Shown here one piece after another: positions 31,254-43,846 of a DNA stretch of 64,000 bases (its first letter is position 1; each line of letters starts with the position of its first letter). Position numbers and translations under genes: made by a program. A model generated the notes under the pieces. It did not search any database, was not told the origin of the DNA, and was given only the letters and a program-made list of their open reading frames with translations. Where the stretch lies: the NCBI RefSeq assembly GCF_040938485.1, contig NW_027271318.1, forward strand, positions 434,001 to 498,000, written 5' to 3'. The stretch is from Diadema antillarum. Its lineage: Eukaryota.

Positions 31254-34200
31254 ATGGCTCCAGTGAAGCTCAAAAATGTCGTTTCTTTCAGCTCCCAGGT
31301 AAGTTTATTTTAGAAAATAATCCATCTTACCGTAATTTACGACTTGGTACACTGGTCTAAGTTACTGAGTGTCTATTTGGCTGATTATTGACTGATTAAT
31401 CCACACGTCAATCACTTTGGGTTGTGTATACTGTGTAAATTTACGTGTAGAGATGAGTCTGGTTCTTTTAGTCCCACCTATCTGAATATCTGTGGACGCA
31501 ATTTTATAATGACTGTGCTGTGGTATGGTATGACTATGTTTATATGTATTAAATTGAAGGTTCTAAATTCTAAGGTAAAGCAATACAAAAAGTAAAGATC
31601 CAGAGTGTTAGTCAGAGGCATATAAATTTCAATTTATATGCTTCTGTGTGATCATGATATATACAATATGACATTTATTTTGTGTGAACCACTGCACTGT
31701 CACTGAGTCTGAGTGATTGATACGACTTACGAGACATCGTGTCATCGACTCTAACGGGTTACGTCTCTAACGTTAGACTCTAGTCTAACAACTTAGATCT
31801 ACCAACTAGTCTTGTGTGCGTGTGATGTTGTCAACATGGATTCTGGATAGCAATACAGTGTGAGATACAAAATGTAGGTAGGATGTAAATTTTAAAAATC
31901 CTTAATAAACTTAAACGATAGTTTGATAGCAACTTTATAGGGTGTTGTTAGATCTTCAGTCCAGTCCACAGATCTATCTAGTTCTAGATCTTAACTAGGA
32001 CTGCAACCAGCCCGAACACCACAATAAGATAACTGCTGTGAAGGAGCGCCCCGGCCCGGGGACCGGGGTTAGTTGAGTCATGCTCAACTGGAATGGAGAG
32101 TAACGTTAGAGTGCTAACAGTTTAAGACTGCTAGTCTGCTGTCACTTCGCTGCAACAGCATGGCACTGCTGTGTAAAGTTAGAATCTGCTGTTTGTGATT
32201 TTGTTTGATGACTTTGATAAATGTCTCTATTTTAAACTTTTTATTACAAGGTGCACATTTTATTTCTTGGGCAATCCAGAGACAGAGTCCAGGGGCTTTC
32301 CCTTTAGCTATAGCTAGGGGCCACAAAATCGATTTGTTTGGACAATAATTGGATAGACCCTGATGATATGTGGCCATGCACATATTCTGAATTCTGTGCT
32401 TTCTGAGTTGCCATATCATGCATCGTCACAAATTGATATCATTGCATATGGATTCACCCAGACCAAACCAAGAGAACGCAAACAAGTTTCATACATGTGT
32501 GTTGTTAAGTCTCACTGAGCTCGGTGGTCTTTCTTTTTTCTCACACTCACAAGCCAGTCAAGGTTTTTCTCATGCCTCACAAAATAAATCCCCCAAAACA
32601 CACACACACAGACACACATACAAAAATGAATTTCAGCCACCAATAGAGTCACAGTTTGATACATTTTTTTGTCTGAAGTATTACATTTAGTATGCACCAG
32701 ATCACATCATTTAGAGCTTGGAAATGTTAAAGCTCCTTTACGCCCCCCCCCCCCCCCACATGTACCCTTCCCCCTCCTCCCATTCTCTCACTTCATTTTT
32801 TCTGGTGGCGCTGACATATCGCAAAATCTCAAGCTTTACTGGTCTCTGGCCTTGACATCTCTGGAGTTTTCATCTCACAGTCAAACATGAACACTGCTAA
32901 AATATTGATGAGTGGAGTGACAGCAAGTTTATAGTGTCACCCTCAGTTTGAAAAACTAAAAGGCATGCAATCACTACACAGCTGTGCATCACTGCTTGCC
33001 TTGGAAGTCGTCTGTTGTTTGTGAGGAAATATTCTAGTGCATTTGAAGTAGTAATCTGTCAGTAATTGACCAAGAAGAATTGAGAAATGGTAAAGTTGTC
33101 CCACTTTAACCAAGTTGCTTTCTTTTTTCCTTCTTGCGATTACATGTTTATTCATTAATTTGGGGGCTAAAGATTAGCTTGTCGCTACTTATCAGTAAGT
33201 GTGGTACATTCAAAATAAATGTTTCACATTGAATTGGCATACCCTCAGCATTCTAATTTTTTGAAGTAAAGGAAGAAAGGAATATACATCTTGTTTTGAA
33301 AGCATTTGCTATCTACTAGCTCTTTATATTTTTTCATCACTTTTTTTGTTTTGTATACCTCACAATAGGATTCTATCCACCGAGCAGAAAATTTACTTGG
33401 ACCGAGTCAATGGCGACGTTGGCTCTGTGCCCCAGGGGATCGATCAGGGTCAGTCCAGGTGGAAATTCAGCTGGAAAGGGCGGTCAAGATTGGTTTCATC
33501 GATATTGGTAAGGATCAGCTTTTCCTATCTATCATGGCAATAATTTCAAATTTCATTTATTTGGCTACCATGCGCTATTGATCTTTCTCTGTCTTCTCCT
33601 TCTCTGTCATTACAAACTCATCTCTTGCTCATATTTTTTATGTACCTTTTAGGCCTTGGTATTTGATTTACATGTATACAAGGGGAAAAAACCCAAACAA
33701 ACACATTTCCCATAGAGGCCACTCACACAAGAGAGAATACATAGCAGTTATGGCATTTCAAGCAGTCATGATGAATGGGCTGAATACTGTAAATCCGGAC
33801 ATTTTCGCTCGCATGAAACTTCAGTGAATTTTGCAAAGAGTAAACAAAATTTAGGAAAGTCAAATGCATGCAACAGTTTTTTGTCTACACAATGCACTGA
33901 ATACCAGTGGCAAGTAGCAAAAGTTGTATGCCTTGAAAAAGGATGTTGGCACCACTTTGTGAAAGTTTCATTAAGCGATTGTTACTGGTTTTACAGCTTG
34001 TACTGTAAAAGTGGAAATGTTCGCATTGTTTGAATTTTCGCGCATTTCGTGCAACCAGAAGCTAGCGCGAAAATAAAAGCACGCGAATATTTTTGCATGC
34101 CATATGTTCCAGTAGTTGACGTCTTGATTCCGCGTAATTAAAAACACGCGAAACTCTTCTTATCCGGCCAAGCGTGAAAAACTAGTCGCGCGAAAATATC

Positions 34201-43200: not shown

Positions 43201-43846
43201 ATCTCAGAGGGGATCAAGGGGTAGGGGAAGAGGAAGGGGGAGAGGGAGGGGTGGGAATGCATGGGGTGGTGAACACACGGACCAGGCCCAGGTTGCCACG
43301 AGGGGTAGAGCTCAGGGCGGTCGGGGGAGGGGTTCGAAAAGGGGAAGGGGGCGAGGGAAAACCCCTGCCGTGAATGCCCCATCCTCCAGTGCTTGGCTTG
43401 ATTCAGACAGTTCTAGTGATAGTGGCAACGAGTGGATCCCTGGGGGGGACATTGTGCCCTCCGGTACGGCAACACCTCGAACCATTCCCACAGCAGGAGG
43501 GCGTGGCACTGGAAGAGGGAGAGGTAGGGGCAGAGGTAGGGGAAGGGGTCAGGGGCAGGGTGCTAGCCATGACTGGCAAGATTTAGACAGCAGCGGCAGC
43601 GATGAGAGTTTGCCGCATGGTTTGAGTTATGGAGGCGGATCCTTCGGTCACATGGACGACCCTATGACTTGGGGAGGTGATGGAGGGACGACCTTTGACC
43701 TCGTGCCCTGCCCCATTTGCATGGAGGAATACCCAGAGAGCTGTATTGCCGTGCATGCTGCCCTCTGTGGCGAAACTGGGGGAGCACCATCGATGCAAGA
43801 CGCTGGCTTTGTGAGGGATGTCGCACCTGCAGTGTGGGTAGATTGA
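31254..43846 (+). CDS. XNDC1N: XRCC1 N-terminal domain-containing protein (XNDC1N-like), 9 exons, about 930 aa, with two DEK-C-like repeats, RG-rich region and C-terminal UBZ-type finger
   Basis: join(31254..31298,33369..33507,34482..34634,35576..35742,36319..36437,37936..38360,40694..41308,41782..41992,42928..43846) = 2793 nt, phase-consistent; an alternative last acceptor at 42955 is also in frame. The N-terminus (MAPVKLKNVVSFSSQD...AENLL...RRWLC...QLERAVKIGFIDIGNYGSALIEI...MTPMDSKLGKNKTGVKMF...WDRVKVICRQLF...QFGLAFI) matches XNDC1N rather than XRCC1, and no BRCT repeats are seen. The C-terminus has CPICMEEYPESCIAVHAALC. Confidence 0.86.
34001..34213. mobile_element. Same Tc1/mariner-like MITE, copy B (XNDC1N intron 2)
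   Basis: Full-length colinear copy of 30865-31077. Confidence 0.88.
36531..36875. mobile_element. hAT-like MITE, TIR CAGAGACTCCAAC, 6-bp TSD TGTTCG (XNDC1N intron 5)
   Basis: Perfect 13-bp TIRs; TGTTCG at 36525-36530 and 36876-36881. Reverse-complement paralog of 12662-12977. Confidence 0.88.
38484..39910 (+). mobile_element. HINE/DINE-1-like element carrying an about 158-bp tandem array (XNDC1N intron 6)
   Basis: Subterminal IRs TGTCCCCGCCG (38486-38496) / CGGCGGGGACA (39874-39884), a 5' hairpin closing on GGGGAC, a (GTCC/GTGT)n tract, a 3' stem-loop ATTATGC-ACC-GCGTAAT, T-rich flanks. Confidence 0.82.
38600..39870 (+). repeat. Tandem array, about 8 units of 157-159 bp
   Basis: The anchor CTACAAAATGCTAC recurs at 38751, 38910, 39067, 39225, 39383, 39542, 39699 and 39857, with a diverged first unit from about 38600. 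Confidence 0.97.

What the first reader, a model, noticed from the sequence alone, without database searches (positions are those of the whole stretch)
31254..43846. Extended XNDC1N-like protein: XRCC1-N + 2 DEK-C-like bundles + RG-rich region + UBZ-type finger
After the XRCC1-N domain the predicted about 930-aa protein has two about 55-aa repeats (LEGQLREFL...TLAELRPKFE..LGR.LDKSERA.FKR) whose pattern matches the DEK C-terminal three-helix motif (inference). It also has Ser-rich linkers, long GRGRG tracts interleaved with W-x-D-S-D-S-S acidic motifs, and a C-x2-C-x11-H-x3-C finger with UBZ4 spacing that lacks the usual helix Asp. XRCC1-N binds Pol beta, and RG regions bind RNA/PAR and are PRMT substrates (established). 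The combination suggests an uncharacterised chromatin or DNA-damage scaffold; I do not recognise this architecture as described.
Basis: partly seen in the sequence, partly recalled or inferred. Interest (0 to 1): 0.72.

Follow-up and report, generated by a model that had tools for sequence, protein, structure and literature searches.

The report
Sea-urchin XNDC1 orthologue, long form
This is one real sea-urchin gene, the orthologue of the named but unstudied vertebrate gene XNDC1; it joins an XRCC1-type DNA-repair domain to two small helical modules, an arginine-glycine-rich stretch and two zinc fingers of the ubiquitin-reading type, which suggests a DNA-damage adaptor but does not prove one.

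Summary
The gene has 10 GT-AG exons, not 9: a conserved 119-nt exon lies at 36319-36437. The ORF is 962 codons. There are two C-x2-C-x11-H-x3-C fingers, not one; the missed finger spans the exon 9/10 junction.

The window comes from Diadema antillarum. NCBI's model XP_071497124.1 (440 aa) ends inside exon 7, and exons 8-10 are unannotated. Full-length orthologues in other echinoderms, a hemichordate, molluscs and cnidarians have the same domain order. Vertebrate XNDC1N (about 400 aa) keeps the XRCC1_N domain, two linker motifs and both fingers, but lacks the helical module and the RG tract.

The two repeats are a lineage-specific tandem duplication; Strongylocentrotus and Lytechinus have one copy. 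Each repeat is predicted to be a three-helix bundle. The DEK-C reading is only weakly supported: Pfam DEK_C is the top hit, below threshold, for three cnidarian orthologous modules, and fold matches do not separate DEK-C from FF domains. The finger profile best matches WRNIP1, RAP80 and RAD18 fingers, but the canonical Asp is missing.

Function is inferred. The scan noted a similar XNDC1-like gene on another piece of this genome.

The parts
31254..31298 (+). Exon 1: start codon and the first 15 codons of the XRCC1_N domain
   Evidence: ATG at 31254 and donor GTAAGT. Identical to the N-terminus of P0001.
33369..33507 (+). Exon 2: XRCC1_N, Pfam profile positions 16-60
   Evidence: Pfam XRCC1_N E 3.5e-7. 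AG/GT splice sites; the exon ends in phase 1.
34482..34634 (+). Exon 3: XRCC1_N, Pfam profile positions 62-111
   Evidence: Pfam XRCC1_N E 3.4e-12. Splice sites.
35576..35742 (+). Exon 4: end of XRCC1_N (the domain ends near 35682) and start of the linker
   Evidence: Pfam XRCC1_N E 4.2e-9, profile positions 115-148. Donor GTGAGT in phase 0. This boundary is the one used in P0001.
36319..36437 (+).
   Evidence: Present in P0001 and conserved in S. purpuratus P0003. AG|GAG acceptor and GA|GTAAGT donor in phase 2. The W is invariant across 9 orthologues, including vertebrates.
37936..38360 (+). Exon 6: conserved L-G-R-A-A-K-L-I-L-A motif, Ala/Ser-rich linker, and the first half of repeat 1 (38276-38360)
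   Evidence: The acceptor at 37936 needs phase 2, which exon 5 supplies. First halves of the two repeats are 63% identical.
40694..41308 (+). Exon 7: second half of repeat 1 with its tail (40694-40875), Ser-rich linker (40876-41211), and first half of repeat 2 (41224-41308)
   Evidence: The NCBI model removes 40881-41119 as a frame-shifting 239-nt intron and stops at 41207.
41782..41992 (+). Exon 8: second half of repeat 2 with its tail (41782-41963)
   Evidence: 66% identical to the repeat 1 counterpart over 60 aa, with the same phase-1 intron position. Not annotated in the NCBI record.
42566..42642 (+). Exon 9: L-P-A-W-M-N-S-P motif and the first two Cys of finger 1 (finger starts at 42627)
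   Evidence: 67% identical over 24 aa to S. purpuratus P0003 residues 469-492. Splice sites.
42909..43846 (+). Exon 10: rest of finger 1 (42909-42952), RG-rich region (43133-43546), acidic W-x-D-x-D-S-S motifs (43394-43414 and 43574-43594), finger 2 (43709-43768), stop codon (43844-43846)
   Evidence: Motif positions. The C-terminal 63 aa are 46% identical to the S. purpuratus C-terminus, including the final W-V-D. Finger alignment.

Best explanation
**What it is (shown).** 31254-43846 (+) is one 10-exon gene of the sea urchin Diadema antillarum. It is the orthologue of vertebrate XNDC1/XNDC1N (first named XNDR) and encodes about 962 aa. The domain order is:
1. XRCC1_N domain.
2. Two short linker motifs shared with vertebrates.
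3. Two copies of a roughly 85-aa unit, each a three-helix module plus an NKENGWL.AKP tail.
4. CCHC finger 1.
5. An RG-rich disordered region with two acidic Ser clusters.
6. CCHC finger 2.

The long form (helical module, usually RG tracts, one to three fingers) is the ancestral metazoan state. Vertebrates kept only the XRCC1_N domain, the linker motifs and the two fingers. The second copy of the helical unit arose by tandem duplication of an exon pair in the Diadema lineage.

**How it probably works (inferred, about 35%).** It is a non-enzymatic adaptor of the DNA-damage response.
- The UBZ4-type fingers and the RG tract would take it to ubiquitylated and/or poly(ADP-ribosyl)ated chromatin.
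- The XRCC1_N domain would bring a family-X polymerase such as Pol beta, or nicked or gapped DNA.
- The helical module, probably a divergent DEK_C-type domain (about 55%), would add a DNA or protein contact.
For: **One gene**
- Ten canonical GT-AG exons join in matching phases into a 2889-nt ORF with a single stop at the end.
- Exon 5, exon 9 and the exon 10 tail are conserved in the contiguous 790-aa S. purpuratus protein.
- Full-length models with the same domain order exist in Lytechinus, three starfish, a brittle star, a sea cucumber, Ptychodera, six molluscs and cnidarians.

**Orthology with XNDC1**
- XNDC1N scores above XRCC1.
- Residues outside XRCC1_N are invariant across the family.
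- Two fingers with the same spacing are found in frog, bird and mammal proteins.

**Helical module**
- The repeats are 63-66% identical.
- AF2 predicts helices at residues 2-26, 29-40 and 46-64, pLDDT 83-85.
- An HMM of the module finds it in molluscs and cnidarians (17-40 bits) and in none of the vertebrate proteins held.
- DEK_C is the only Pfam family hit by more than one of 18 modules (3 members, best E 2e-4). The Pfam FF family is not hit.
- Structural neighbours include 7z0o chain G at Z 6.6-6.7; I take this chain to be the three-helix N-terminal domain of Uaf30 described in PMC9020658. DEK 1q1v scores Z 5.2-5.3.

**Fingers**
- The profile hits WRNIP1, RAP80, RAD18 and FAAP20 fingers.

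**XRCC1_N**
- E 1.8e-34 to the solved XRCC1 N-terminal domain. In that alignment E69 is kept, F67 is Leu and V86 is Thr. That these three positions contact Pol beta is from my own knowledge of the XRCC1 literature, not a tool result.

**Duplication**
- Camarodont urchins have one copy.
- The sea cucumber has its own pair of copies.
Against: - No transcript evidence could be obtained: no RNA run was listed.
- The only annotated product in this genome is a 440-aa protein that stops inside exon 7.
- No Pfam UBZ or DEK_C model reaches its cut-off on the Diadema protein.
- Neither Diadema finger has the Asp at H+2 that I recall as needed for ubiquitin binding in WRNIP1 and RAD18. Finger 1 reads H-I-L-D-C and finger 2 H-A-A-L-C.
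- Fold matches for the module are all below Z 8, the range the tool calls non-specific for helical bundles, and FF domains score slightly higher than DEK-C.
- Foldseek found nothing.
- Profile searches of solved structures did not find DEK.
- The XRCC1 cysteines C12 and C20 are Phe and Arg here.
- No functional data exist for any family member (PMC12876460).
Confidence: 0.8

Rival explanations
1. The locus is as NCBI annotates it: a 440-aa protein (XRCC1_N plus one helical unit) that ends inside exon 7. The downstream open frames would then be a separate gene or a decaying remnant.
For: XP_071497124.1 (P0001) uses a GT-AG intron at 40881-41119 that shifts the frame and stops at 41207. No gene is called over 41782-43846 in the public record. 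No RNA run could be listed to decide the question.
Against: The 239-nt 'intron' lies inside an uninterrupted Ser-rich ORF. Exons 8-10 stay open for about 408 codons in phases that match exon 7. They encode residues conserved with S. purpuratus, up to the terminal W-V-D and both fingers. Every other species' model runs from XRCC1_N through to the fingers. A truncated isoform could still coexist with the long one.
Confidence: 0.1
2. The repeated module is a generic or FF-like three-helix protein-binding bundle, not a DEK_C relative. The resemblance to DEK-C is only a shared helical pattern.
For: Pfam DEK_C does not hit any echinoderm or hemichordate module. FF domains are the best structural neighbours: 2k85 at Z 6.9-7.0, rmsd 2.3 over 61 residues, against 1q1v at Z 5.2-5.3. 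All Z values are in the non-specific range. Profile searches of solved structures do not find DEK.
Against: No Pfam FF hit appears for any of 18 modules, whereas DEK_C is the top hit for all three cnidarian orthologues, in the same register (profile positions 15/18 to 46/47 of 54). The chain I take to be the Uaf30 N-terminal three-helix domain is tied with the FF domains (Z 6.6-6.7, rmsd 2.7, 59 residues aligned). That Uaf30's N-terminus is classed as DEK_C is from my own knowledge.
Confidence: 0.4
3. The two CCHC fingers do not read ubiquitin. They bind something else (DNA, PAR or a protein partner) or are only structural, so the protein is not recruited through ubiquitin.
For: Asp at H+2 is absent from both Diadema fingers and from both fingers of mammals, frogs and most echinoderms. 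It is present only in finger 2 of two starfish and of Ptychodera. All Pfam UBZ-type hits are below threshold. RAP80's first finger (H-A-M-Y-C), one of the closest matches, also lacks the Asp.
Against: The best solved relatives of the finger profile are fingers of WRNIP1, RAD18 and FAAP20, which I know as ubiquitin-binding. The CP.C...F/Y......H...C pattern and spacing are strictly conserved from cnidarians to mammals. UniProt's rule calls the S. purpuratus fragment UBZ4-type.
Confidence: 0.4
4. The gene is a divergent XRCC1 paralogue of echinoderms and not the XNDC1 orthologue.
For: Several databases name members 'DNA repair protein XRCC1-like'. Frankenberg et al. found no XNDR orthologue in lancelet or sea squirt (PMC3170594). 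No TRP channel gene, the vertebrate neighbour of XNDR, is called in the 10 kb downstream; the next called gene there is DNTTIP1, on the minus strand.
Against: No BRCT domain is found in any exon or orthologue, whereas true XRCC1 hits carry BRCT families and score far lower. The linker motifs and the two terminal fingers are shared with vertebrate XNDC1N.
Confidence: 0.05

Closest known systems
Vertebrate XNDC1 / XNDC1N (XNDR of Frankenberg et al. 2011, PMC3170594)
   Same: Both have an N-terminal XRCC1_N domain without BRCT. Both share the post-domain motifs (P.W..N..F and L.R.A..L.A) and two C-terminal C-x2-C-x11-H-x3-C fingers, the last often followed by Gly-Glu. No family member has a studied function (PMC12876460).
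   Different: The vertebrate proteins are about 400 aa. They lack the three-helix module and RG tracts. In vertebrates the gene flanks TRPC2; here the next called gene downstream is DNTTIP1. Diadema has the module twice.
XRCC1
   Same: The N-terminal domain is homologous: E 1.8e-34 to 1xna/3k75, with E69 kept.
   Different: This protein has no BRCT domains, and C12 and C20 are not conserved. It has UBZ4-type fingers, RG tracts and helical modules instead. XRCC1 scores far below XNDC1N with the family profile.
UBZ4-type zinc fingers of WRNIP1, RAD18, FAAP20 and the RAP80 zinc finger
   Same: The CCHC ligands have the same spacing, and the CP.C motif and the hydrophobic residue after it are shared. 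These are the best solved-structure hits of the finger profile: 3vhs E 5e-5, 9sqy_I E 7e-4, 2mre E 2.5e-3.
   Different: The Asp two residues after the His is missing in both Diadema fingers. No Pfam UBZ model passes its threshold. Ubiquitin binding is untested.
DEK C-terminal domain (Pfam DEK_C, PDB 1q1v) and the Uaf30 N-terminal three-helix domain (taken to be 7z0o chain G)
   Same: The module is a three-helix domain of similar size with a similar sequence pattern. DEK_C is the top sub-threshold Pfam hit for cnidarian orthologous modules. Fold matches are Z 6.6-6.7 (7z0o_G) and 5.2-5.3 (1q1v).
   Different: No hit is significant for the urchin modules themselves. FF domains match the model as well or better. 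The module has a conserved NKENGWL.AKP tail that I do not know from DEK.
RG/RGG proteins such as CHTOP
   Same: Long (RG)n tracts. NCBI names the S. purpuratus C-terminal fragment 'chromatin target of PRMT1 protein-like'.
   Different: The resemblance is compositional only and no homology is shown. Here the tract lies between two zinc fingers.

Membership tests
XRCC1_N domain (Pfam PF01834) | Match to the Pfam model above the gathering score (21 bits) over the whole domain | tested here: met
   168 bits, E 1.5e-49, profile positions 1-148 on P0001. The separate exons score 30.8, 47.0 and 37.0 bits. E 1.8e-34 to solved XRCC1 N-terminal domains.
XNDC1 / XNDR family | XRCC1_N at the N-terminus with no BRCT domains | tested here: met
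   No BRCT family in any exon or orthologue. True XRCC1 hits carry PF00533, PF16589 and PF12738.
XNDC1 / XNDR family | Closer to vertebrate XNDC1N than to XRCC1 | tested here: met
   XNDC1N scores E about 1e-40 with the single protein. With the family profile XNDC1N scores about 1e-99 and XRCC1 about 5e-49. No tree including invertebrate XRCC1 was built.
XNDC1 / XNDR family | Shared motifs after the domain and two C-terminal CCHC fingers | tested here: met
   The linker W and R and the last finger's C, P, C, F, E, H, C are invariant in 9 orthologues from hemichordate to mammal. Two fingers are present in seal, mouse-like rodent and frogs.
XNDC1 / XNDR family | Synteny with TRPC2 (the vertebrate hallmark, PMC3170594) | tested here: inconclusive
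   Within 10 kb downstream the only called gene is DNTTIP1, on the minus strand. The rest of the window was not searched for a TRP channel.
UBZ4-type zinc finger | C-x2-C-x11-H-x3-C ligand spacing | tested here: met
   Two sites, at aa 646-665 and 918-937, aligned without gaps with 17 orthologous fingers.
UBZ4-type zinc finger | Sequence similarity to solved UBZ4 fingers or curated models | tested here: inconclusive
   The family profile hits WRNIP1 at 5e-5, RAP80 at 7e-4 and RAD18 at 2e-3. All Pfam UBZ-type models (zf-WRNIP1_ubi, UBZ_FAAP20, zf_UBZ, zf-C2HC_2) stay below their cut-offs.
UBZ4-type zinc finger | Asp two residues after the zinc-binding His (the ubiquitin contact in WRNIP1 and RAD18, from my own knowledge of those papers) | tested here: not met
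   Finger 1 reads H-I-L-D-C, with the Asp shifted by one. Finger 2 reads H-A-A-L-C. WRNIP1 reads H-L-D-R-C in the alignment.
UBZ4-type zinc finger | Binds zinc and ubiquitin | not testable with these tools
   Needs protein biochemistry.
DEK_C domain (Pfam PF08766) | Match to the Pfam model above the gathering score (24.8 bits) | tested here: not met
   No hit at E up to 10 for the Diadema, other echinoderm or hemichordate modules. Orthologous cnidarian modules reach 21.5, 18.0 and 15.5 bits, as their top hit.
DEK_C domain (Pfam PF08766) | Three-helix fold superposable on DEK 1q1v | tested here: inconclusive
   Three helices are predicted, pLDDT 83-85. 1q1v scores Z 5.2-5.3, rmsd 3.1-3.2, 62 residues. 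7z0o_G scores Z 6.6-6.7. FF domains score Z 6.9-7.0. All are in the non-specific range.
FF domain | Sequence match to the family | tested here: not met
   No FF family appears among the Pfam hits of 18 modules at E up to 10. Only fold-level similarity is seen.
RG/RGG region | Clustered RG/RGG repeats in a low-complexity region | tested here: met
   Six tracts between aa 726 and 863, two of them twelve residues long. RG tracts are also present in other echinoderms, Ptychodera and four molluscs.

The most novel reading that the evidence does not exclude
XNDC1 is an ancient, pan-metazoan, non-enzymatic branch of XRCC1-type repair. In its ancestral long form an XRCC1_N polymerase- or DNA-binding head is delivered to damaged chromatin by two ubiquitin-reading fingers, a PAR/RNA-binding RG tract and a DEK_C-type DNA-binding module. 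Vertebrates keep a trimmed version of it. In Diadema the duplicated module has split its roles: copy 1 keeps the conserved helices and copy 2 keeps the conserved tail.
Probability: 0.25. Interest if true: 0.6.

Novelty: new member of a known kind. Interest (0 to 1): 0.4.

Why it matters
XNDC1 is a 'dark' gene. A 2026 survey reports zero PubMed results for it even though the mouse knockout has a skeletal phenotype (PMC12876460). Human XNDC1N is still being validated as a 'missing protein' (PMC10775140).

The invertebrate long forms, including this one, show which parts the family has kept since cnidarians: the XRCC1_N head and the UBZ4-type fingers. That yields a concrete, testable hypothesis: recruitment of an XRCC1-like head to damaged chromatin through ubiquitin and/or PAR.

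The result also corrects the view that the gene is restricted to jawed vertebrates (PMC3170594). In addition, the public Diadema annotation misses the C-terminal 520 or so residues. For the scan itself this is a sound gene-model and architecture result, not a new kind of system.

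Tried and rejected
- **First 9-exon model.** I extended exon 4 to the donor at 35802 and joined it to 37936. This gave a clean 942-aa ORF. I dropped it when P0001 and the S. purpuratus protein showed a conserved extra exon at 36319-36437.
- **RNA evidence.** No RNA run was listed for exon 7.
- **Helical module.**
  - Pfam on single exons cannot see it, because an intron splits it.
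  - Pfam on full-length echinoderm and hemichordate proteins, and on nine excised modules, gave no DEK_C hit.
  - Profile and single-sequence searches of solved structures gave only chance-level hits (Atg17, designed helical proteins), not DEK.
  - Foldseek against PDB found nothing below E 4.7.
  - A second AF2 model from a deeper alignment gave the same ranking.
- The first finger alignment used an out-of-frame window reference. I redid it as A5.
- **Repeat profile search.** The two-sequence repeat profile against 1.84 billion representatives found only urchin proteins plus two weak repeat-protein hits. The wider distribution came only from the family profile and a local HMM.
- **Short motifs considered.** I looked at APIM, LIR, RIR and PAR-binding motif readings of the GWL.AKP tail and the linker motif by eye. 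None fits, so none is claimed.
- **KEN tripeptide.** It occurs in both tails and in camarodont urchins, but the starfish sequences I read show no such tail. A degron reading is untested.

Full report
**Gene model**

Stop-free frames and splice sites on the + strand first gave a 9-exon, 942-aa ORF. A search with a profile of the repeat then returned the NCBI product of this very locus. It is XP_071497124.1, 'uncharacterized protein [Diadema antillarum]', 440 aa (P0001). It also returned the 790-aa S. purpuratus orthologue (P0003).

Both proteins contain a segment that my first model lacked. That segment maps to a 119-nt exon at 36319-36437 with AG/GT sites and the right phases.

The final model has ten exons: 31254-31298, 33369-33507, 34482-34634, 35576-35742, 36319-36437, 37936-38360, 40694-41308, 41782-41992, 42566-42642 and 42909-43846. 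Together they make 2889 nt and 962 codons, with a single stop at the end.

The NCBI model departs from this inside exon 7. It removes 40881-41119, a 239-nt GT-AG interval inside the Ser-rich ORF, shifts frame and stops at 41207. Nothing is annotated over exons 8-10.

No RNA run could be listed. The continuity of exons 7-10 therefore rests on three things:
- matching splice phases;
- an open frame of about 408 codons across exons 8-10;
- conservation with S. purpuratus: exon 9 is 67% identical over 24 aa, and the C-terminal 63 aa are 46% identical up to the last three residues.

Contiguous models with the same domain order also exist in many other species.

**N-terminal domain**

Pfam XRCC1_N matches exons 2-4 piece by piece and matches P0001 over profile positions 1-148 at E 1.5e-49. 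Against solved XRCC1 N-terminal domains the E-value is 1.8e-34. In that alignment C12 and C20 are Phe and Arg, F67 is Leu, E69 is kept and V86 is Thr. That F67, E69 and V86 sit at the Pol beta interface is from my own knowledge of the XRCC1 literature. No BRCT domain is present.

**Repeats**

The two units are real.
- The first halves are 63% identical over 32 aa and the second halves 66% over 60 aa.
- Each unit is split at the same residue by a phase-1 intron.
- The exonic DNA is clearly similar between units, while the flanking intron sequence is not.
- The unit is about 85-90 aa: three helices plus a conserved tail ending in ..NKENGWL.AKP.

S. purpuratus and Lytechinus have a single unit, and the sea cucumber has its own pair. 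The Diadema pair is therefore a lineage-specific tandem duplication of an exon pair.

The single camarodont unit resembles Diadema copy 1 in the helices (27-28 of 32 residues, against 24-25 for copy 2). It resembles copy 2 in the tail (24 of 28, against 16). This fits complementary divergence after duplication. It would also fit a loss in camarodonts by unequal crossover. I cannot tell which.

**Is the module DEK-C-like?**

AF2 on nine and then eighteen aligned modules gives three helices (residues 2-26, 29-40, 46-64) at pLDDT 83-85. The other results are as follows.
- Foldseek finds nothing.
- The exhaustive aligner gives FF domains at Z 6.9-7.0 and 7z0o chain G at Z 6.6-6.7. I take chain G to be the three-helix N-terminal domain of Uaf30 described in PMC9020658. 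DEK 1q1v scores Z 5.2-5.3. All are within the range the tool calls non-specific for helical bundles.
- Pfam DEK_C does not hit any echinoderm or hemichordate module.
- An HMM of the module finds orthologous modules in molluscs and cnidarians.
- For all three cnidarian modules DEK_C is the top Pfam hit, in the same register, at 21.5, 18.0 and 15.5 bits against a cut-off of 24.8.
- DEK_C is the only family hit by more than one of 18 modules, and FF is not hit at all.

I read this as weak, transitive support for a divergent DEK_C-type domain, at about 55%.

**Fingers**

There are two sites with C-x2-C-x11-H-x3-C spacing, at aa 646-665 and 918-937. The first spans the exon 9/10 junction and is contiguous in S. 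purpuratus.

All 18 fingers from nine species align without gaps, with C, C, H, C invariant and the Pro after the first Cys nearly so. The profile's best solved relatives are:

| Solved structure | E-value |
|---|---|
| WRNIP1 UBZ | 5e-5 |
| RAP80 zinc finger | 7e-4 |
| RAD18 UBZ | 2e-3 |
| FAAP20 | 0.02 |

UniProt calls the S. purpuratus C-terminal fragment 'UBZ4-type domain-containing protein'. Pfam models all stay below threshold.

The Asp two residues after the His, as in WRNIP1's H-L-D-R-C, is absent from both Diadema fingers and from most orthologues. It is present only in finger 2 of two starfish and of Ptychodera.

**Low-complexity parts**

Six RG tracts lie between aa 726 and 863. Two acidic W-x-D-x-D-S-S clusters lie at aa 813 and 873, and a Ser-rich linker separates the two repeats. 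RG tracts recur in other echinoderms, Ptychodera and four molluscs, but not in vertebrates.

**Family and evolution**

The 440-aa product finds starfish, brittle star, sea cucumber and Ptychodera proteins of 621-730 aa, and then vertebrate XNDC1N of about 400 aa.

A profile of nine full-length members adds Lytechinus, six molluscs and cnidarians. True XRCC1 with BRCT domains scores far lower.

All members have XRCC1_N followed by one to three terminal CCHC fingers. Vertebrates lack the helical module. The long form is therefore ancestral, and vertebrate XNDC1 is a trimmed derivative. This contradicts the statement that the gene is limited to jawed vertebrates (PMC3170594).

**Function**

Nothing is known experimentally for any member. 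XNDR was described only as XRCC1_N-related with a putative repair role (PMC3170594). Xndc1 'retrieved zero results in PubMed' in 2026 (PMC12876460).

My proposal is inference from domain content. The protein would be an adaptor taken to ubiquitylated and/or PARylated chromatin by the fingers and the RG tract. Its XRCC1_N head would hold a family-X polymerase or gapped DNA, and its helical module would add a DNA or protein contact.

**Earlier scan note**

The scan holds a note (s1-220803) on another piece of the same genome. It describes an XNDC1-like gene with the same parts, and its follow-up reached the same verdict. I saw it only after my own analysis, and it agrees with mine. Whether that piece is a haplotig, an overlap or a second copy was not checked.

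Exons were searched by reference. The spliced repeat 1 and the orthologues were taken from proteins that the tools returned.

Exons were joined only inside local scripts, to test reading-frame continuity and to locate motifs. Only short junction contexts were printed.

The third word-index protein search was not used. The N run at 24240-24370 was left alone.

Noticed in passing
window 38710-39871: A tandem array of a 158-bp unit, 7.4 copies at 94% matches, lies inside intron 6 between the two halves of repeat 1. It accounts for much of that intron's length (2333 nt, against 473 nt for the matching intron of repeat 2).
   Followed up: no
window 40881-41119: The public NCBI model XP_071497124.1 splices out this 239-nt GT-AG interval inside the Ser-rich coding region. 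That shifts the frame and ends the protein at 440 aa. It may be a real minor isoform or a prediction artefact.
   Followed up: partly
window 30679-31155, 33824-34378, 45072-45550, 47838-48209: Copies of an interspersed repeat, in both orientations, whose translations share strings such as CKSG.FR and KI.A.EYF. One copy lies just upstream of the gene's start codon.
   Followed up: no
window 11897-16029 (+): Exons of an EMG1/NEP1 rRNA methyltransferase gene. Pfam EMG1 scores E 4.8e-16 on 15700-16029. Assigning the upstream frame at 11897-12085 to the same gene is my reading by eye; Pfam gave no hit there.
   Followed up: partly
window 24991-27904 (+) and from about 49680 onward (-): Neighbouring called genes in the public record. 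Upstream is a 180-aa product with a faint Polyketide_cyc2 hit. Downstream, on the opposite strand, is a DNTTIP1/TdIF1 homologue (PF18192, PF21229). No TRP channel gene is called in the 10-kb flank.
   Followed up: no
P0004 (WP_224241418.1, Hyalangium gracile): A myxobacterial protein made of six repeats of about 81 aa, whose ..L.SS.GRKLT..ERE.WK.. stretch weakly matches helices 2-3 of the urchin module. It scored E 2.5e-5 in the 1.84-billion-protein search, and 10-13 bits per repeat locally. This is probably a shared helical pattern.
   Followed up: no
P0014 (Holothuria leucospilota) residues 266-336 and 356-426: The sea cucumber orthologue also has two copies of the helical module. They look closer to each other than to any other species' module, so this appears to be an independent duplication of the same module.
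   Followed up: partly
window 40840-40875 and 41928-41963; P0003 residues about 385-440: The tail motif ..(N/K)KENGWL.AKP follows each module. It is repeated in degenerate form up to three times in S. purpuratus, and GWLQA-like strings occur elsewhere in starfish and brittle-star orthologues. It contains a K-E-N tripeptide. Its partner is unknown.
   Followed up: partly
another piece of the same genome (scan note s1-220803): The scan holds a 12555-letter finding on another piece of this genome that describes an XNDC1-like gene with the same parts. It could be a haplotig, an overlapping window or a second copy.
   Followed up: no
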